DNA of 64,000 nucleotides, taken from contig NW_026262581.1 in NCBI RefSeq assembly GCF_021869535.1, forward strand, positions 17,608,001-17,672,000. The letters are read 5' to 3'. The translations under genes were made by a program, and so were the position numbers. A model generated the notes under the pieces. That model was not told where the DNA came from and did not search any database. It saw only the letters and a program-made list of their open reading frames with translations. Within the stretch, counting starts at the first letter, position 1. Every line of letters starts with the position of its first letter. The DNA comes from Mytilus californianus (Eukaryota). Positions 1 to 9,685 of this stretch are shown here, piece by piece.

Positions 1-1651
1 AAAAATCAATCGTGAGACTTTATTAAGCAACGGAACGAATGGAAAACAACTGTCACATTCCTGCCTTCACAGGCCATGTAAAAGTTGCAAAATACTGTCA
101 ATATCACTAGTTTTCTAGGCCAGAAAATGACTGCCGCTTGGACAGACAATCAATTTTAGATCGACATCTCATCACAATTTCATCCACCAAGCTCACTGTA
201 AAACTGTGTCCTTCGGATGGTTAAGGCTTACTTTTTCAAGTGTTACTGTCAGTTTTTGTCACGTGTTTCATGAAAACCTGTCGGGCATGCAAAAATAATA
301 TCGTTCAAGCCTTTTACAATTCCCCGTTCATTACGAAATCACACTTATATTTTATGTCATAATTGGCAAATAGCACCTCAAACTATCCTATTGAAAGAGT
401 TAGCTGTTTACAAAGCATTCGTTACGTAATTTTCTCCTATTGTACATAGTGGTAGTGATCTAAGATTTCAGATCGACATCTAAAGTGTTTTGTGGTGTAA
501 TCAATGCAAAACATAATCCAATCCAAAAGGGGTTTTATGTTGTTTTTTCCCATGGGGTTGATTATATTTTGAATTTAGAACATCGAATGGATACCCTTTT
601 GGCAACAAAAACATGAGATAAGTCGATCGATGACACGTAAGAATCATTTTACCACAATTAACAATTAGATAAACGTGGTGCCTGATTAAGTCCTCGAATG
701 CTCCGAAAAACACGTATTGAATACTACACTTCTTCTGTTCAGATTCTTGAAAAGTTGTTTGTAATCAAGCATATGAAGAGAAAATCCGTCCTGTCAGTTC
801 AATCAGAAACATGTAATACTAGAGATTGGCAACTAGGTCATACAATCTATTGAAATATTCGCAATACGGGTCAGTGTTGTGATGTTGGTCTGGTTAATAT
901 TTGTTTATTACCTTTATATCTATACTTGTACTCAACAGGAGAGCGCATATATAGACGTTGTTGGAAAGCTGATTTGAAGTTATCGACTGACTTGGCGCAC
1001 ACTATATCTCCCAGCTGGTTCAAATGAATCATAGTCTTTGTCATGGCATTGTCAGTTTCTCTTCGTCTTGTGAGTTTTGAATGCCGTTTCAAATTTATTT
1101 TCAACTGGAACTTTATGCAGGATTTATAGCTTGGACCAAACAGTCGACCACCTTGTACAGATAAACCAGCTTTCTTGCGTGTTCTTCTGCTATCAGCAGG
1201 TTATCTAATCATAAGTCGGCTAGTTTTTAGGTAACCGATCACTGTTCACTTGATTTGTAAATCCTGTTAATAAATCTAGTAGCATTACGTTGGATCCTTT
1301 CTAGTTGGTTCATGGCGTTTGGGTATAAAGATCCCATTCAAATGCTCTACATTCCATCGTGGATAGCTATATAACGATATGCAAGCGCAGTCTTAGGGAA
1401 ATAATCGTAGGTTGCGTCTCAGTAAGTCGAGTTCTGAGTTTGTTTCTTGGCTACATTGTGAATGGGAATTGTCCATTTACGATATTTGTAGTGCTAACTA
1501 TGGATAATGTTGGATCTGTTGTAAATAATGAGAATGAAGCACTTCTTTGCATTAAAATCCATGTGCCAGTCTTTGCTGCATTCTTCAGGTTTTCCGGGTC
1601 TTCTTGTAACATTCTTTGGTCACGATGTGATTTGGTGTCATTGATTGTCAT

Positions 1652-2205
1652 TGTGATTTGATGTTCCTTTGTAGCAGACAATCGTTGTTGTGGTTTGATG
1701 TTCCTGAGTAGTAGACAATGGTCGTTGAGATGATGTTCCTGAGTAGCAGACAATCGTTGTTGTTGTTTGATGTTCCTGAGTAGTAGACAATGGTCGTTGA
1801 GATGATGTTCCTGAGTAGCAGACAATCGTTGTTGTGATTTGATGCTCCTGAGTAGCAGAAAATCTTTGTTGTGATTTGATGTTCCTGAGTACTAGTAGCA
1901 GACAATGGTTGTTGTGATTTGATGTTCTTAAGTATCAGACAATCCATGTTGTGATTTGATGTTCCTGAGAAGCAGACAATCGCTGTTCTGATTTGTATGT
2001 CTTGAGTAGCAGACAATGGTCGTTGTGATTTGATGTTCTTAAGGCAGACAATCCTTGTTGTGATTTGATGTTCCTAAGTAGCAGACAATCGCTGTTCTGA
2101 TTTATATTGCCTGAGTATCAGACAATGGTTGTTGTGATTGATGTTACTGTATAGCAGACAATCGTTGTTGTGATTTGATGTTACTGTGTAGAAGGCAATC
2201 ATCAG
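1652..2205. repeat. Minisatellite, about 15 degenerate copies of a 35-37 bp unit (TGATTTGATGTTCCTGAGTAGCAGACAATCGTTGTTG)
   Basis: Directly visible tandem units. Local 37+35 bp alternation (72 bp) explains the 24-aa peptide repeats in ORFs 1451..1825 and 1648..2016. Confidence 0.9.
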
Positions 2206-2530
2206 TAAACAGTCTTATGGGTAGTTCGTGTGATAAGTACCGAGTACAAATCCTTGTGTTTCTCCATAGTCGACTTTAACTTCATCTGATTCATCTACAT
2301 CAATTAGTACTTTAATTTGCCTGTATTTGGACAGTTCTAACTGTTTATTGAGCGTTCCATATACGTCAAATTTATGTATTTGTTTATTGTGTGGCACGGT
2401 GTTGAAAGCTTTTTGAGAAGTAAAGGACTGTGACCTCAGTTTTGGGTACCATCATCGTGTTTACCTGAAGTCATGTAGAGATATTGGATTGCACGGACCA
2501 AAATCCATGAATAAGTGACTATAGAGTATA

Positions 2531-2672
2531 AAATTCAGAATGGAAATGGAGAATGTGTCACAGTGACAACAACCCGACCAAAGAGCAGAAAACAGTCCAA
2601 GGCCAACAATGGGTCTTCAGCACAGCGAGAAAATCCCGCACCCGGAGGCGGGCTTCAGCTGGCTCCTAACCA
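2531..2672 (+). repeat. Short interspersed repeat (AAATTGAGAATGGAAATGGGGAATGTGTC... family), inserted in the LINE
   Basis: Homologous copies at ~42200-42325 (+) and ~59235-59435 (-). It interrupts the LINE RT between KHKLLT and the HGF motif. Confidence 0.75.
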
Positions 2673-2850
2673 AAAATGTTAGAAGTTTATGCTTTTCTAC
2701 GTGTTTTAGTAGGTGCTTACAGATCATGTGTTCCAGTATCTTACAAGATACATATGTTAATGATACTGGTTTGAAGTTTTCTGGTGTGTATTTGTCTCCT
2801 TTCTTAAACACTCTTGAAATGTTAGCGTTTAACCAGTCGATGTATCAAAT

Positions 2851-3277
2851 AAACTCATAGATACCAGGATTAAATTTTGTATTTACGCCAGACGCGCGTT
2901 TCGTCTACAAAAGACTCATCAGTGACGCTCGAATCCAAAAAAGTTAAAAAGGCCAAATAAAGTACGAAGTTGAAGAGCATTGAGGACCAAAATTTCTAAA
3001 AGTTTTGTCAAATACAGCTAAGATAATCTATTCCTGAGGTAGAAAAGCCTTAGTATTTCAAAAATTAAAAAGTTTTGTAAACAGTTAATTTATAAATATG
3101 ACCATATCAATGATAATTCATGTCAGCACAGAAGTGCTGAATACTGGGCTGGTGATACCCTCTGGGAATTAAAACTCCACCAGAAGTGGCATCGACCCAG
3201 TGGTTGTAAATAAAATCACCATAGATACCAGGATTAAATTTTGTATTTACGCCATACGCGCGTTTCGTCTACAAAAA
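2851..3277 (-). mobile_element. Non-LTR retrozyme-like element: one 364-nt monomer flanked by hammerhead-containing direct repeats
   Basis: Direct repeat TAGATACCAGGATTAAATTTTGTATTTACGCCA(G/T)ACGCGCGTTTCGTCTACAAAA at 2858 and 3222 (period 364). The lower copy carries a complete hammerhead and the upper copy is 5'-truncated. Confidence 0.8.
2867..2936 (-). ncRNA. Type I hammerhead ribozyme (self-cleaving RNA motif)
   Basis: Minus strand reads cguca CUGAUGA GUCU-uuugu-AGAC GAAA C-gcgc-G UC uggcg. It has a canonical core, a 4-bp stem II, a minimal stem III with palindromic GCGC loop, a GUC cleavage triplet, a 5-bp stem I (cguca/uggcg, one G-U) and a distal GGAUU/AAUCC helix. Confidence 0.85.
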
Positions 3278-3850
3278 TGATCCAATGCTTTTGAATTTTG
3301 GTACATTAATTTAAGTCTCGGTGCTATATGTTTAGAGTACTCCTTTAGGATTCTATTTGGTATGTCATTTGGACATTTTGGTGGATTTAATTGTTTTAGA
3401 AAATTTAAAACGCTTTTTTGGTCTTTTTACCAGGGATAGTATTGTATTCTTGATTGTTTGGTTGGCTTTGGCAGTGTTTTGTTGGTGTCTTTGCTAAAAC
3501 TGATTTCAATTGTTGTATTAGTAATTCTGCGATTCCTTTGCTGTCGTTTACTAAATGGTCCTAGCTTTTCAAGGTAACACACCTACGTTATCCTGTTTTC
3601 TCGATTTAACATATTTCCAGAAGGGCTTCGGATTGTTGTTGTTTAGTCCTTCCAATAAAGTGATGTTTATGTAGGCCCTTTCAGCTTTTCTGACATGTCG
3701 CTAGCATTCTTATTGGGAATACATATAGTTTGTTCATTTCTGGTTCTCTATGATTATTGGTGCAGCCTTGTTTTCTCTTAAACATTTTCCTGATTTTGTG
3801 ATTTATGCATGGAAGGCTTGTTTTAGAGCGGGTGGGGTATTGTGGTATAT

Positions 3851-4230
3851 AAAAACTCATCAACGATACCAGGCTTATAATTGATACGACAGACGCGCGT
3901 TTCGTCTACATAAGAGCCATGAGTGACGTTCAAATCAAAAGAGTTGAAAGGTCAAATCAAATACAAAGTTGAAGAGTGTTAAAAACCTAAAATTCCGAAA
4001 AGTTATGCCGTATACCGTATTTGAATGCGACTAATGCAATCTATGCATGGGGGTAAAAAATCCTCGTGTTTCGAAAAATTTAACATTTAATAAACAGTAC
4101 AGAAAATGAACATATCAATGTCAACACAAAACTGCTGACTACTTGGCAGGTGATACCATCGGGTACAAAACGTTCACCAGCAGTGGCATCGACCCAGTGG
4201 TTGTCAAAATTTATCAAAGACAAAGATAGT
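3851..4230 (-). mobile_element. Older, degenerate copy of the retrozyme-like repeat
   Basis: Shares AAACTCATCA..GATACCAGG, GACGCGCGTTTCGTCTAC, AGTTGAAGAG and CAGTGGCATCGACCCAGTGGTTGT with the 2851-3277 element. The ribozyme core is mutated to CUCAUGG. Confidence 0.75.
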
Positions 4231-4708
4231 TCTTGAATGGTCCCAAGTTGATGTACTGTAGCACCCTGTTGGTACATATCTGTGATTTTGGTTGATGTGA
4301 GTTTTTATGGAGTTCTTCCTATTTCGAGTTGGAGTAAATTTAGCATTTTCATTGCAAAATAATCAAATGCTTCATTTTCCTCTACTTTCATGATATTACG
4401 ACGACGTGATTTATTTAGCCCCCTTTTATTACAATTTTGTTTTAGGCAAATGAAAATGTTAATATAACATATGTTCTAATGATTGCTAAATTACTATTTA
4501 GATTATTCAATAAAATATACTCGGAAAATTAATTTCTTCTTTTTAATCAAGTTAAAATATAATTGGTCCGTGACGAGACTTCATCCCGCAGTTGGTGGGA
4601 AGATGTATTAGGCTTGTTTGACCCAAAGACATTACCAAAGATATGAAACATCGGCGCATTTAAACTCTCTAAACCCAAAACATGGCCGAATGTGAATCTT
4701 TAATAATA

Positions 4709-4970
4709 AAAGAAGAATATGTATGCGGACACGAATGCCCCCGCTCAAGCTTTGCAATTTTTCAAATTAAAAAGGGGCATAACTCTAGAACGGTAAATGA
4801 CTTACAGCCCAAATTCGAACTCTGTCTGCGAGGTTTGGTTCTTGGCATTGTGTATGAGTTTCATAAAATTTAGATGAAGAAAACTGAAGTCAGAGTGCGG
4901 AAACGAACGGACGGAAGGACGGTTAAGGGTAACAATTAATGCCCCGGTTGCCTACGGCGGGGGCATAAAA
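4709..4970 (-). mobile_element. HINE/Helentron-like non-autonomous element, single core unit
   Basis: Reverse complement begins TTTTATGCCCCCGCCGTAGGC..GGGGCATTA, then a GTCC-type microsatellite and the TTCTAGAGTTATGCCCC core shared with 30707-31461. Confidence 0.6.
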
Positions 4971-5011
4971 GAATGACACAGAAAACTAGCGTAAAAACAA
5001 TGCAAATTCCA

Positions 5012-5368
5012 CTAAAATATATTAGTTTCAGGTAAGGGTGAAGGTTGGCGCCTGTTAAAACGTTTAAATCCGCTGTATTTGTTTGTATCCACCTGTTCTA
5101 AGTCAGGAGTCTGTTGTTCAGTGGTTGTCGTTTGTTGATGTGGTTCATAAGTGTTTCTCGTTTCTTTTTTATATAGATTAGACCGTTGGTTTTCCTGTTT
5201 GATTTGTTTCACACTAGTCATTTTGGGGCCCTTTATAGCTTGTTGTTCGGTGTGAGCCAAGGCTCCGTGTTGAAGGCAATACTTTGACCTGTGATTGTTT
5301 ACTTTTTACACATTGTGACTTGGATGGAGAGTTGTCTCATTGGCACTCATACCACATCTTCTTATTTA
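5012..5368 (-). repeat. Interspersed repeat of the AAGATGTGGTATGA(T/G)TGCCAATGAGACAACT family
   Basis: Same terminal motif recurs at ~7490, ~22861, ~36196, ~46150 (+) and ~59460-59675 (-). Confidence 0.7.
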
Positions 5369-5828
5369 TATATATGAAGTGAATTAAGCTTTTTAGAAAA
5401 ACTAAGGATTGATAAACAGTTCCTGCTCTACTTGTGGCACCCGTGGTGTTGCAAATAATATGTTATATCTTATGATAAAGCACAATCTATGACAGTCATA
5501 AGAATACATGATTATAACCCTAGCAACAATTCTTTTATGGACCATAAGTGACCTGTTTCAAATAAAATGTCTGTCCTAACCAAAATACCATCCTTCACAC
5601 GTGCAGGTCAAATTTCTGCCCGTCATCTCGACCTAATCATTTTCCAGAACATTATTTATTATTTTTTAACTTGTTCTCGTCATGGAATCGCATTAAACAC
5701 TTGCAATCCGCGTTAGGCAAATGACAATCAACAAAACAAAGTCAAGTCATCTGGACAAATTTCGAATGAATTCAACAGAGGCTAACAAAGATGTCAATGC
5801 CATATTCATAAATATTTCGATATTCATG

Positions 5829-7433
5829 CAGAGCTCCAGATAAGCTGCGTATTTGCGTGATCACGCAATAAAAATAATTAAAAACCCAATGCAATTGCCC
5901 ATTGCAGGGTTCAAAAACCCAATTAATTCAAAGGAAAACCCAATTATATGCCAAAAACATGGGTTCTTAACGCTTTTATTCGCTATCGTTTGCGTTATTT
6001 ACCCTTACTTGATTACAGTCGTCGCGTAAATCTATTTTTATAATATTTATAATTGGAAATGTCCTTTCGTTCTAAAAATAGAGCCCTGCATCAAGTAGCT
6101 GTAATGGGTCCCTGTTGGAATTTTCCGTTGCTCAAAAGGTACACGTGTTTATGAAAACATTTCGATCTTCTCGGCGTTTATCCAATTAGCGTGTGACATG
6201 CTGTCATATTTTTTCGAATTGCTCGGGACTTATCATAACATACAATGAATTAAAACGAAAGTAAACGTCCGGTAAAAATATTGAATAGAAGCATGTTTTC
6301 GGATTCTTTTTGATAGCTGAGGGAAAGTTATGATGATAACAAGACTCAGCTAGTGATTTTAGGAAGCGGCCATTGAACGCACGGGCGTGTTTGCGTACCA
6401 TAACGAGAACATTTGCTAGAGCGATAAACACGGGGTTCCGTCAAAAACGAAATCAGTTGGAATAAAAAGTGAAAGGCCAAATCAATTATGACATGATATG
6501 TAGTTTGAAAGCATCGAAACCAAAAGTTCTGATAAGGGACAACTTAACCCAGATTTATGTAAATTGAATTAAACGAAAACAGTTTATACATTATTTTTTT
6601 TCATTTTAGTTGATGAGTGAATACACATATCCGTTTTTTACGTCAATGTAGCTTGACACTTTCTATGTTTTGGTCTAATTGTTCTAGATGCTTAAGATAG
6701 TTGTCTTATTGGCAAGTGCAGTATAACATTGTCATTTATTTACTTGATGTTGCAGAATTATTTGTAAATTTAAGTTGAATGTGGTCTCCGTCATTATACA
6801 CCACCCTATAAACCTCAAGGTTTTGGGGTATATCTTAAATCTGGAAACTACTTTTTATTTTTATTAAAAAGTAGATCTGGCAAATAGGTGAAAGGACTGG
6901 CAAAACTTTCTTACAGCACCTAAATTTCACATATATTTCACAAAAATCTAAACACTTAGCCACACCTACCCCAACTATAATTAAACTGTAGCTAGGGTGA
7001 TCATATGGGATCTAGAAAGGCAATTAGTTCCTGTCCAACTAGTGACACCAGCTGCAGTTTACATAAGTTTTGAGAAAATACAAAACTGACAGAACGTTTA
7101 AAACGGGACACAAATTAAATGTACAATTGCTCGTCAGTGAATAAACCCAATAAAACAGCTAGCACATATTCTACAAAGAAAGAAACACATTTAAGATGGA
7201 AACACATCTGGGGTTGATATAATGTGATTATAACATGGCATTGCCTAAATATTCAATATTGTGTTGATGAAAAAACCCAATACATATAGGAGCTTGGTGG
7301 TGAAAAACCCAATTTGATATTTGCTTGAGGGGTGAATTGGAATTGATAATGCAATTAAAAAACTTTATCACCCAATTACATAAAAAAATGGTGGGTAAAA
7401 ACCCCAATTTGTGAATTCTTATCTGGAGCTCTG
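5829..7433. mobile_element. Non-autonomous hAT-type DNA transposon (1.6 kb)
   Basis: Perfect 16-bp TIRs CAGAGCTCCAGATAAG / CTTATCTGGAGCTCTG. 8-bp flanks TATTCATG / AATTCATG (7/8 match, TSD-like). Repeated AAAACCCAAT motifs near both ends. Confidence 0.8.
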
Positions 7434-7489
7434 AATTCATGTACTATTATTAGAAAGTGTGCTTTAAAATGGCACGTGGGATAGAATTT

Positions 7490-7705
7490 AAAAATAAGGA
7501 GGTGTGGTATGCTTGCCAATCAGACAACTATCTACAAAGTCCAAAATGGCGTGGATGTAAACAACTACATGTCACCGTACGGCCTCCAATAATAAACAAA
7601 GTCCGTTCCGCATAGTCAGCTATAAAAGGTACCGACATGACAAAAATGACAAACGAGAAAATCAACGACCCGAGTTATAACAAACAATAATTTTTAAAGA
7701 AATAT
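7490..7705 (+). repeat. Interspersed repeat (GTGTGGTATG..TGCCAAT.AGACAACT family)
   Basis: Homologous to the copies at 22861, 36196, 46150 and 59460. Confidence 0.65.
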
Positions 7706-8314
7706 GACGGACAAGTGCCGATGAGTGACACAGGGCCTAGTGACTACATATTGGATAGATAATTCAAATATTATCAACAGATTTGTGACAGTTTATTAGA
7801 AATACTAAAACAAATTTGTATAATATAAATTATGGTAAAAAAAATATATCAATAAATACATATACATATGAATGAATGAAAAAAACATACTCATCGATAA
7901 AAGTAATTACGTATCCAATCAATACCTTAATACTTTCATGATTATTTACATATATACAGTGATAACAATTTAAAGAAACATACGTTTAAACAACTCAAGT
8001 GACTCATTTTACACTACTATAGTTCTTGTGTTGCTTGTCCCAAGCTGTGACCACTGTTACACAATGTAACAGAAAAAGCAGTCACAAGTATATATAAAAA
8101 AGATAAAGTTCAAGCATAACACAGATATCTGTATGAAAATTGTTCAAAATAACATTTATGAAATGAAAAAAATATAAATCCAAATCCTGTTGATAACTTC
8201 ATTGTATCAGTCTCAGTTTGTTCTATCATGAATACGTTTGATTGCACACTTTACTCAGATTATGTAGAGGATTCGAATATGAGTATTATTGTTATTCCAA
8301 CAACATTGGCCGTT

Positions 8315-9685
8315 CTAATTCGCTATATCAGTCATCTTAAAAACCCAAGCATCAGTGCTTGGAATGTTCGCAAAAGATATATTTGGCAATGTTATATTCA
8401 CACCAGACGGCTGCACTTTTGTATATCTAAAGCTATAATCTTGATACCCTAACATTGTTATCAATGTGCTGCTACTGGTGATAGGTGCCTTTAAATACAA
8501 ATAGTTTGTATCAGGCCACTCCACTAAAATTGCATAAACATTTGTTCCCGTTTCAGTCTTTTTCATGGTATACCAACATGCCTTAGTGGCATTGTCTTGT
8601 TGAGCTGTCCACGGTTTTGAACTATAGATGGCTTCACCGTTTATTCTCATCCATTTTCCAAACTGAATAAGTCTTTCTTCATAAACTGGTTGAAAAGTTC
8701 CATAACTAGTTGGTCCAATGTTCATAAGCATATTACCTCCACAGCTTACAGTTTGTGCAAACGTTGCAATAAGCTCCTGTGATGAATAAAAGTCCTCTAT
8801 TCGTGCATCTCTTCGGAATCCCCAATGGTTTTTGTCTATTGTCCATGAATTTTCGAACTTTCTTTTCTGGAGAGTTGTAGGAAGGTATTTATCATGGCAC
8901 GTGAAGTATCCACCATGATGACACATGTCGCCTTTGCCCCAGCGGTCATTAGTGACAACCGTGTCCTTCACTGGACTGTCATTGTACAGCCAAGCTATGA
9001 ATTCCTTTGACGTCCAATATGTGTCTGATGCTTCCCATTCTCCGTCCGACCAAACTACTTCGGGTTTATATCTATTCACAAGCTCATATAATTCAGGCAT
9101 CGATTTAAATTTCACAAAATCTTGTGTTGTAAAATTGTTTGCTTTGTCTCTAAGATATAAAGGGTTATACCATTCTAACAAAGAATGATAAAGTCCAAAT
9201 CGCAGATTTGTTGTATAGCGAATAGCATCGGCCAGTTCCCCCACAAGGTCCCTGTGTGGACCAACGTCATAAGAATTCCAGTTCCAAGAATAATTAGACG
9301 GCCAGTTGGTAAATCCCTCATGGTGTTTCGAAACTAAAACAACATATTTAGCTCCAGAGGCTTCTAGTATTGCTGCCCATCTTTTAGGATCATAAAATTC
9401 TGCTTTGAAGTCTGCTGCAAAGTCGGCATATGTAAAATCAGGGCGATAATTCCGCTTCATAAAGTCGACAATGTCTCGGTGTCCATTTTTCCAATAATTC
9501 CAGAACCATACTGCACTGTAACTAGGAACCGAGAAAACTCCCCAGTGCATAAATATGCCAAGCTTTGCTTCGTCGTACCAGTCCGGAAGAGGTCGGCTTT
9601 CCAAAGACTCCCAGGTTGGTTGATATCTCTGGCCGAACGTTAATAAAGAGCAATAAAATAACAGGAACAAATATAGAGCAGCCAT
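8315..9685 (-). CDS. FUCA: Alpha-L-fucosidase, GH29 (metazoan FUCA1/FUCA2-like), single-exon CDS, 456 aa
   Basis: Uninterrupted ORF with a hydrophobic signal peptide ([18 protein letters not shown]) and GH29 motifs: [41 protein letters not shown] (nucleophile Asp), [34 protein letters not shown]1 versus FUCA2 orthology cannot be resolved here. Confidence 0.95.

What the first reader, a model, noticed from the sequence alone, without database searches (positions are those of the whole stretch)
2851..3277. Structurally complete type I hammerhead ribozyme in a 364-nt retrozyme-like unit that could yield a circular RNA
Seen: on the minus strand, 2927-2886 reads cguca-CUGAUGA-GUCU(uuugu)AGAC-GAAA-C(gcgc)G-UC-uggcg. 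Every core nucleotide is canonical, and the predicted cut lies between 2891 and 2890. A distal GGAUU/AAUCC helix (2936-2932 with 2871-2867) closes an asymmetric internal loop in stem I. The 3' half of the motif recurs exactly 364 nt away (GUA triplet at 3257-3255), but that copy lacks CUGAUGA. Established: animal type I hammerheads sit in 170-400 nt non-LTR retrozymes expressed as linear and circular RNAs (Cervera and de la Pena 2020), and mussel was among the species studied as I recall. Palindromic short stem III motifs can work as dimers. Inference: this is a young, 5'-truncated retrozyme insertion whose 3' ribozyme may still cut any minus-strand read-through transcript, for example one from the fucosidase gene ~5 kb upstream on the same strand.
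Basis: partly seen in the sequence, partly recalled or inferred. Interest (0 to 1): 0.82.

Follow-up and report, generated by a model that had tools for sequence, protein, structure and literature searches.

The report
Known mussel retrozyme, truncated dead copy
This is a real self-cutting hammerhead RNA motif, but it sits in one ordinary, cut-short copy of a mussel mobile element family that was published in 2020, and this copy shows no sign of being transcribed or of making an RNA circle.

Summary
A complete type I hammerhead lies on the minus strand at 2928-2885, with the cut between 2891 and 2890. A 364-nt direct repeat places a second, 3'-half-only motif (GUA) at 3277-3255.

It is not new. 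A 47-nt stretch covering the ribozyme is letter-identical to the cloned Mytilus galloprovincialis retrozyme Mg353 (Cervera and de la Pena 2020). That clone cleaves in vitro, and its family accumulates as circRNA. The paper's four primers match this copy with 0-2 mismatches.

The locus is a 1.18-unit, 5'-truncated insertion into a decayed LINE reverse-transcriptase ORF. It stops 15-16 nt short of a second ribozyme, so ordinary double cleavage cannot release a 364-nt monomer.

In one stranded RNA run the flanks are silent and the fucosidase transcript ends about 4.5 kb away. Most family reads differ from this copy.

Family-wide, insertions end at one fixed point 46-51 nt past the cut site: 3,328 exact tails, of which 12% continue into another unit. 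5' ends are spread evenly at about 0.5% per nt. A Penelope-like element in the same genome has the same end anatomy.

This scan already holds over 130 hammerhead/retrozyme notes on other DNA of this genome; those shown concern other families, mostly ~540 nt. Interest is low.

The parts
2885..2928 (-). Complete type I hammerhead ribozyme. Helix I is GCGUCA/UGGCGU. Helix II is GUCU/AGAC with loop UUUGU. Helix III is two base pairs closed by a GCGC tetraloop. The cut is after GUC, between 2891 and 2890.
   Evidence: Rfam RF00163, 32.5 bits, full model. The sequence is identical to the published, in vitro active Mg353 ribozyme. It is the commonest core among 58 family ribozymes.
2867..2936 (-). 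Extended ribozyme including the distal part of helix I (GGAUU 2936-2932 pairing with AAUCC 2871-2867) across an asymmetric internal loop.
   Evidence: Read directly. Pairing is kept in 72-91% of cells in this subfamily, is not kept in the sister subfamily, and shows no compensatory change.
2891..3254 (-). One full 364-nt retrozyme unit, from cut-site position to cut-site position. It is non-coding and 35% G+C.
   Evidence: Repeat spacing of 364. It is 93-97% identical to units elsewhere in the genome. G+C is 0.354 and the longest stop-free stretch is 56 aa.
3255..3277 (-). Remnant of the upstream ribozyme, holding the 3' half only: loop 2, AGAC, GAAA, helix III and GUA. This is the 5' truncation point of the insertion.
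   Evidence: The junction with the LINE flank was fixed by comparison with intact LINE relatives.
2847..2890 (-). 3' tail of the element: 44 nt after the cut site, with a 3-nt deletion relative to the consensus. It ends at the family's fixed 3' terminus (...GAGUUUAUUU).
   Evidence: Most of the 22 independent insertions examined end at unit position 46-51, including this one once its flank-like last letters are set aside (2 end at 34 and 54). There are 3,328 exact tails in the genome, and only 388 continue into another unit.
2839..2846 (-). Eight letters (GAUACAUC) of unclear origin between the element's end and the resumed LINE sequence. Nine target letters (CTGCCCAGA in relatives) are missing and there is no target-site duplication.
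   Evidence: Alignment to 14 related LINE copies.
3278..3640 (-). Upstream flank: a decayed non-LTR (LINE) element, the part just before its reverse-transcriptase domain.
   Evidence: It is 68-76% identical to about 20 other copies. Relatives encode Exo_endo_phos and RVT_1.
2617..2838 (-). Downstream flank: the same LINE, at the start of its reverse-transcriptase domain (DWLNANISRVFKKGDK...PVSLT).
3847..4235 (-). Second, older retrozyme insertion in the same LINE, about 72-83% identical to the first. Its ribozyme (about 3929-3886) is dead: CUCAUGG replaces CUGAUGA and helix II is broken.
   Evidence: Repeat families D4-D8; sequence; unit match at 72% (L001).

Best explanation
The locus is a dead-on-arrival copy of the published Mytilus 350-390-nt non-LTR retrozyme family.

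How the family works:
- Shown by others: tandem copies are transcribed, each unit's hammerhead cuts after GUC, the 364-nt monomers are joined into circles by a tRNA-ligase-type enzyme, and the RNA accumulates.
- Inferred here from insertion anatomy: new DNA copies are made by reverse transcription that always starts at one point 46-51 nt downstream of the cut site. It runs back through the GUC|UGG junction without stopping there, so the template is a circle or an uncut concatemer. It falls off at a roughly constant 0.5-0.6% per nucleotide.
- Consequences: about 85% of insertions are shorter than one unit, and there is no poly(A) and usually no target duplication.
- Likely enzyme: an autonomous Penelope-like element of the same genome has its own hammerhead 53-60 nt before its insertion end and forms the same head-to-tail partial tandems. 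A Penelope-like reverse transcriptase is therefore the likeliest engine (about 60%).

This copy:
- Copying stopped after 431 nt, inside loop 2 of what would have been the second ribozyme.
- It landed in an old LINE reverse-transcriptase ORF.
- It keeps one intact ribozyme that would cut a minus-strand transcript at 2891/2890.
- It has no promoter evidence, no detectable transcription of its flanks and no second ribozyme, so it most likely does nothing.
For: Identity with the published family:
- A 47-mer of Mg353 is exact at 2930-2884.
- The published primers match with 0, 1, 2 and 2 mismatches.
- The paper reports about 5,000 copies, 350-390-bp repeats, kobs of about 0.1 per min and circRNA by northern.

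Family size:
- 5,803 first-look candidates.
- 1,536 exact ribozyme cores.

Fixed 3' end:
- 19 of 22 independent insertions end at unit position 46-51. This one is aligned on to 58, but its last letters are flank-like, and it fits once they are set aside (2 others end at 34 and 54).
- Only 388 of 3,328 tails continue into another unit.

Even 5' truncation and read-through of the junction:
- 6-9 of 100 copies are truncated within the 13 nt before loop 2.
- 0 of 100 start exactly at the cut site.
- At most 5 of 100 start at the round-completion point.

Insertion site and target loss.

Penelope-like parallel: nine independent ends lie 53-60 nt after that element's GUC, and it forms 3,927-bp head-to-tail tandems.

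RNA:
- Family reads are 76% ribozyme-sense.
- The flanks have zero depth.
- Most reads differ from this copy at 2885 and 2936.

The 2026 preprint links vertebrate retrozymes to Penelope terminal repeats.
Against: - No cleavage or circle was measured for this copy.
- The one RNA run was sampled at about 6% and shows neither ends piled at the cut site nor back-joints.
- No Penelope-like element with sequence similarity to this retrozyme was found in 30 sampled loci, so the partner is inferred from anatomy alone. A LINE enzyme would give similar 5' truncation.
- The pattern samples cover the first 100 places per search and need a non-G letter at one position.
- The hazard estimate assumes about 96% per-base identity.
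- The catalytic fold is 11.7 kcal/mol above the predicted ground state, although the identical ribozyme does cleave in vitro.
Confidence: 0.85

Rival explanations
1. This copy is functional: it releases a 364-nt monomer, and so a circle, from 1.18 units. The single 5' half (GCGUCA-CUGAUGA-GUCU, 2928-2912) would pair first with its own 3' half and then with the upstream 3' half (3270-3249). That would form a split hammerhead that cuts after GUA at 3255/3254.
For: All parts needed for the split ribozyme are present, and every helix can form with standard pairs. GUA is a cleavable triplet (established hammerhead NUH rule, from my own knowledge). The constrained split fold is only 3.8 kcal/mol worse than the cis fold (-85.6 against -89.4).
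Against: There is no transcription of the flanks in the RNA run, and most mapped reads carry other copies' letters. Both catalytic folds lie 11.7-15.5 kcal/mol above the predicted ground state of -101.1. No back-joint was seen in raw RNA reads. No promoter is known inside the unit.
Confidence: 0.07
2. The family is copied by a LINE (APE-type) reverse transcriptase acting on circles or concatemers, not by a Penelope-like enzyme.
For: A fixed 3' start with random 5' truncation is the classic target-primed signature of LINEs and SINEs. LINEs are abundant here, and the copy itself sits in one. No sequence homology to a Penelope-like element was found.
Against: There is no poly(A) or simple-repeat tail, and target duplications are mostly absent (only 2 of 22 insertions score above the 95th percentile of mismatched-flank controls). 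Head-to-tail partial tandems and a hammerhead about 50 nt from the end are the anatomy of the autonomous Penelope-like element in this genome. Published co-occurrence and terminal-repeat homology in vertebrates point the same way.
Confidence: 0.25
3. The repeat is a DNA-level satellite or segmental duplication, and the hammerhead is a passenger. No RNA-mediated copying is involved.
For: Tandem arrays can grow by unequal crossing-over, and the 2026 preprint discusses this for arrays.
Against: Thousands of dispersed short copies share one exact 3' end and have variable 5' ends, which DNA slippage does not produce. The copy interrupts a LINE ORF cleanly. The family RNA is abundant and strand-biased.
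Confidence: 0.03

Closest known systems
Mytilus galloprovincialis non-LTR retrozyme (genomic clone Mg353; circRNA clones MN642551-MN642576), Cervera and de la Pena, NAR 2020 (PMC7229834)
   Same: The ribozyme and its immediate flanks are identical (47 of 47 nt). The unit architecture and size class are the same (364 against 353 nt; the published range is 350-390). G+C is low, there is no ORF, and all four published primers match.
   Different: The published work concerns multi-unit repeats and their RNA. This locus is a single 1.18-unit insertion lacking a second ribozyme, and it shows no sign of expression.
Penelope-like elements with hammerheads in their pseudo-LTRs (Cervera and de la Pena 2014; Craig et al. 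2021, PMC8557442). Here: the family with a 755-aa ORF and 3,927-bp tandems
   Same: Both form head-to-tail partial tandems with a 5'-truncated upstream copy. Both carry a hammerhead 50-60 nt before the fixed insertion 3' end. Neither has a poly(A) tail.
   Different: The Penelope-like element's ribozyme is the minimal type with no helix III loop and a palindromic ACAUGU. It encodes RT plus a GIY-YIG nuclease. It has no detectable sequence similarity to the retrozyme.
Vertebrate non-LTR retrozymes related to Penelope terminal repeats (Li, Clavereau and Pollet, bioRxiv 2026, 10.64898/2026.07.22.740005)
   Same: It describes the same class, and its solitary 'monomer derivatives' are regarded as offspring that cannot transpose.
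   Different: In Xenopus, sequence homology to Penelope termini is shown. For this mussel family I found only the anatomical parallel.
Plant LTR retrozymes (type III hammerheads)
   Same: They are non-autonomous, ribozyme-processed elements with circRNA intermediates.
   Different: They have LTRs, a primer-binding site, a polypurine tract and 4-bp target duplications. They use type III ribozymes, have 600-1000-nt units and high G+C.

Membership tests
Type I hammerhead ribozyme (Rfam RF00163) | Conserved core CUGANGA / GAAA / cleavage triplet NUH, with helices I, II and III in type I topology | tested here: met
   The full 45-position model is matched with all core letters canonical. All three helices pair in more than 90% of cells across 58 family copies, though almost without variation.
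Type I hammerhead ribozyme (Rfam RF00163) | Score at or above Rfam's gathering threshold (34 bits) | tested here: not met
   The score is 32.5 bits. Sister copies in the genome with other loop 2 sequences reach 34.4-44.8 bits. The shortfall reflects the curated cut-off, not a defect in the core.
Type I hammerhead ribozyme (Rfam RF00163) | Self-cleavage | not testable with these tools
   The identical ribozyme in clone Mg353 cleaves co-transcriptionally at about 0.1 per min (PMC7229834). This copy was not assayed.
Animal non-LTR retrozyme (Cervera and de la Pena 2020) | Canonical type I hammerhead inside a 150-450-bp unit found as tandem repeats | tested here: met
   The unit is 364 nt. Arrays of up to 8 or more units spaced 362-365 nt occur elsewhere. 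This locus itself holds only 1.18 units.
Animal non-LTR retrozyme (Cervera and de la Pena 2020) | Non-coding, G+C below 45-50%, no LTR, primer-binding site or polypurine tract | tested here: met
   G+C is 35.4% and the longest stop-free stretch in a dimer is 56 aa. No terminal repeats exist other than the unit itself.
Animal non-LTR retrozyme (Cervera and de la Pena 2020) | Expressed as linear and circular RNA of unit length | tested here: inconclusive
   Family-level reads are present and 76% ribozyme-sense. No ends pile up at the cut site, no back-joints were seen, and the flanks of this copy are silent. Circles are published for the family.
Animal non-LTR retrozyme (Cervera and de la Pena 2020) | Two flanking ribozymes, so that a monomer can be excised from this locus | tested here: not met
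   The upstream motif lacks 15-16 nt, including CUGAUGA.
Non-autonomous partner of Penelope-like elements | Sequence similarity to the terminal (pseudo-LTR) region of an autonomous element | tested here: not met
   There was no similarity in 30 GIY-YIG loci. The two retrozyme-bearing loci (L061, L086) are incidental insertions.
Non-autonomous partner of Penelope-like elements | Penelope-type insertion anatomy: 5'-truncated head-to-tail partial tandems, fixed 3' end, no poly(A), irregular target sites | tested here: met

The most novel reading that the evidence does not exclude
The genome-wide insertion scars of this family act as a quantitative record of how animal retrozymes are copied.

- Reverse transcription is primed at one internal site 46-51 nt past the ribozyme cut.
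- It crosses the cut-site junction with no excess of stops, which implies a ligated circle or an uncut concatemer as template rather than the cleaved linear monomer.
- It ends at a constant rate of about 0.5% per nt.
- The same geometry in the resident Penelope-like element would make that element's enzyme the engine.

The mussel family would then be the first invertebrate case where the partner and the start site can be tested directly.
Probability: 0.35. Interest if true: 0.5.

Novelty: already known. Interest (0 to 1): 0.18.

Why it matters
For annotation, this locus can be filed as a retrozyme fragment inside a decayed LINE. It is not a new ribozyme or a circRNA gene.

The family-level numbers are the useful by-product: one fixed 3' end, read-through of the cut site, and an even stop rate. 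Published reviews say that animal retrozymes show no motif that reveals which enzyme moves them (PMC7761336). A defined start site about 48 nt past the cut, mirrored in a resident Penelope-like element, gives a concrete handle for that open question. Other follow-ups in this scan reached a similar Penelope-type reading on the ~540-nt family, so the idea is not unique to this window.

Tried and rejected
1. The Rfam gathering scan of the window gave no hit. This is explained by the 32.5-bit score against the 34-bit threshold.

2. Free-energy folding does not recover the ribozyme. The 86-nt fold has a z-score of 0.15, and RNAalifold on 58 copies finds another weak helix. The helices were therefore counted by hand.

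3. The first 22 insertions suggested three 5'-end hot spots:
- Loop 2 (5 cases).
- The cut site (3 cases).
- Unit positions 41-58 (4 cases).
Unbiased pattern samples did not confirm any of them. They were artefacts of how my query ranked the hits.

4. A search for target-site duplications found only 2 of 22 insertions scoring above the 95th percentile of mismatched-flank controls (L026 and L030).

5. A Penelope-like element sharing sequence with the retrozyme was not found in 30 loci.

7. Pfam on the 73-aa flank ORF gave nothing. LINE relatives were used instead.

9. RNA run X21 showed no ends piled at 2891/2890 and no back-joints in raw reads. With about 6% of the run read, this is weak negative evidence.

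The 5' junction contig has 30 letters on the element side.

Full report
**Observation**

The minus strand of 2928-2885 reads GCGUCA-CUGAUGA-GUCU(UUUGU)AGAC-GAAA-C(GCGC)G-UC|UGGCGU. A permissive Rfam scan of 2600-3500 matches Hammerhead_1 over the whole 45-position model at 32.5 bits, E 4.7e-6. The gathering score is 34, which is why the whole-window scan at gathering threshold listed nothing.

The motif is not a chance match. Its 32-nt core occurs 1,536 times in the 1.65-Gb genome and the reversed control occurs 0 times.

**What it is**

The supplement of Cervera and de la Pena 2020 (PMC7229834) prints the cloned genomic Mytilus galloprovincialis retrozyme Mg353 with its cut site marked.

- A 47-nt stretch of that clone covering the ribozyme is found exactly at 2930-2884.
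- The paper's four retrozyme primers match this copy with 0, 1, 2 and 2 mismatches.
- The paper reports about 5,000 ribozyme copies in 350-390-bp repeats, co-transcriptional cleavage at about 0.1 per min, abundant circRNA by northern blot, and circularisation by RtcB rather than self-ligation.

The unit here is 364 nt, has 35% G+C and has no ORF over 56 aa. A search of the window's own genome gave 5,803 first-look candidates. The scored matches were 91-97% identical and many lay in arrays spaced 362-365 nt apart. The family and the ribozyme are therefore already known.

**Anatomy of this copy**

The flanks belong to one old non-LTR element. About 20 relatives at 68-76% identity exist, and relatives with open frames carry Exo_endo_phos and RVT_1. 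Intact relatives read ...GGATCA CTGCCCAGA GACTGG... at the start of the reverse-transcriptase domain. In the window the element sits between GGATCA (ending at 3278) and GACTGG (starting at 2838). The nine middle letters are missing, eight unexplained letters stand at 2846-2839, and there is no target duplication.

The insertion proper runs from 3277 to about 2847, which is 431 nt or 1.18 units. It begins inside loop 2 of the upstream ribozyme, 15-16 nt short of a complete second motif. Its two overlapping ends differ by three substitutions and a 3-nt indel over about 70 nt, and its closest genomic relative is 97% identical. It is not very young.

A second, older copy with a dead ribozyme (CUCAUGG) lies at about 4235-3847 in the same LINE.

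**How the family is copied (inference from scars)**

- Fixed 3' end, sampled. In 19 of 22 independent insertions the 3' end falls at unit position 46-51, at ...GAUGAGUUUAUUU(A); this one is aligned on to 58, its last letters being flank-like. The two exceptions end at 34 and 54. The 5' ends vary, and there is no poly(A). The sister subfamily, about 81% identical, ends at the same place.
- Fixed 3' end, genome-wide. The 23-nt tail occurs 3,328 times exactly. Only 388 of these (12%, or about 15% after allowing for decay) continue into a next unit. About 85% of tails are therefore true termini. Copying stops at about 0.5-0.6% per nucleotide. On that rate an insertion as long as this one has a probability of about 0.1.
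- 5' ends. My first sample suggested 5' hot spots at loop 2, at the cut site and at positions 41-58. Position-ordered pattern samples did not bear this out. Six to nine of 100 copies are truncated in the 13 nt before loop 2, against 6.5-7.4% expected. None of 100 starts exactly at the cut site. At most 5 of 100 start at the round-completion point.
- Template. Copying passes the GUC|UGG junction like any other position. This fits a ligated circle or an uncut concatemer as template and argues against the cleaved linear monomer.
- Target sites. Duplications are mostly absent.

**Likely engine**

A GIY-YIG scan found over 1,400 candidates. They include a young Penelope-like family with a 755-aa ORF in 3,927-bp head-to-tail tandems. 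That family has a minimal hammerhead (CUGAUGA-CGGUGCC...GGCACCG-GAAACAUGUC), and nine independent copies end 53-60 nt after its GUC. This is the same geometry as the retrozyme.

I found no sequence similarity between the two. The two loci where retrozyme pieces lie near GIY-YIG remnants are incidental. The literature proposes Penelope-like elements as partners (PMC7761336; PMC8557442). A 2026 preprint shows terminal-repeat homology in Xenopus but did not examine invertebrates. I rate the Penelope-like enzyme at about 60% and a LINE enzyme at about 25%.

**Expression**

I laid one stranded RNA run (X21, raw reads, about 6% read), two probable RNA contig sets and one probable DNA set on 2500-8400.

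- Strand calibration. The minus-strand fucosidase gene (Pfam Alpha_L_fucos) gives first-mate-on-plus reads only. First-mate-on-plus therefore means minus-strand RNA.
- Family signal. Retrozyme bin 2894-3090 has depth 52 against 16, which is 76% ribozyme-sense.
- Origin of the reads. 93% of laid reads run on into unlike sequence. At 2885 and 2936 most reads carry another letter (24 of 32 and 55 of 67). Ninety-two reads diverge at 2884 into a sister-subfamily sequence.
- Flanks. The LINE flank 3288-3681 has zero depth, as do 4273-4666 and 5455-5651.
- Fucosidase transcript. Its signal falls from 9 to 0.2 between 8.4 and 7.6 kb, so no read-through reaches the element in this sample.
- Other negatives. 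No ends pile up at the cut site and no raw-read back-joints were seen.
- Assembly check. A short-read contig with no differences bridges the 3' junction (2722-2884), so the junction is not an assembly artefact.

**Could this copy still make a circle?**

The upstream 3' half and the downstream 5' half can in principle form a split hammerhead that cuts after GUA at 3255/3254 and releases exactly 364 nt. Constrained folding gives -85.6 kcal/mol for that form, -89.4 for the cis ribozyme and -101.1 for the unconstrained fold. Without transcription this remains a formal possibility (about 7%).

**Verdict**

It is not supported on circle formation or on read-through from the fucosidase gene. This is a known element and an ordinary dead copy.

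This scan already holds more than 130 hammerhead/retrozyme notes on other parts of this genome. Those shown concern other families, mostly ~540 nt, and several follow-ups reached a Penelope-type reading. My end-anatomy counts agree with that reading for the 364-nt family.

Noticed in passing
window 3847-4235 (minus): A second, older retrozyme insertion sits in the same decayed LINE, about 600 nt from the first. Its hammerhead core is mutated (CUCAUGG) and helix II is broken. Two insertions of different age within about 1 kb may be chance or a target preference.
   Followed up: partly
window 8315-9685 (minus): An uninterrupted 456-aa alpha-L-fucosidase ORF (Pfam Alpha_L_fucos plus Fucosidase_C, E 4e-125) is expressed on the minus strand in run X21. 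A complete animal glycosidase in a single exon is unusual and could be a retrogene.
   Followed up: partly
window 5061-5454: A very high-copy repeat shows by far the greatest depth of the stretch in all four runs, with RNA reads on both strands (142 and 205). Hundreds of reads diverge at 5304-5371. It is probably an abundant short interspersed element.
   Followed up: no
window 1450-2200: A minisatellite of 35-37-nt units (2009-2188, 69-100% alike) is flanked by longer repeat-derived ORF artefacts on the minus strand.
   Followed up: no
G000 C24:23574054, C24:23575620, C24:35921836, C96:3324011: A retrozyme variant reads GAGTCTTT directly followed by TGGCG. It lacks the 3' half of the ribozyme from loop 2 to the cut site and is present in several copies. 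This deletion derivative has evidently still spread or been duplicated.
   Followed up: no
L065-L085 (e.g. G000 C110:55838761-55861102): A young Penelope-like element family has an intact 755-aa ORF and at least six head-to-tail copies spaced 3,927 bp apart. It has a minimal palindromic hammerhead 53-60 nt from its 3' end. Several copies end in or next to (AT)n microsatellites.
   Followed up: partly
window 6240-7430: RNA reads here lie mainly with the first mate on the minus strand (up to 26 against 1). This indicates a plus-strand transcript or repeat between the fucosidase gene and the retrozyme, with several fixed differences from the window.
   Followed up: no
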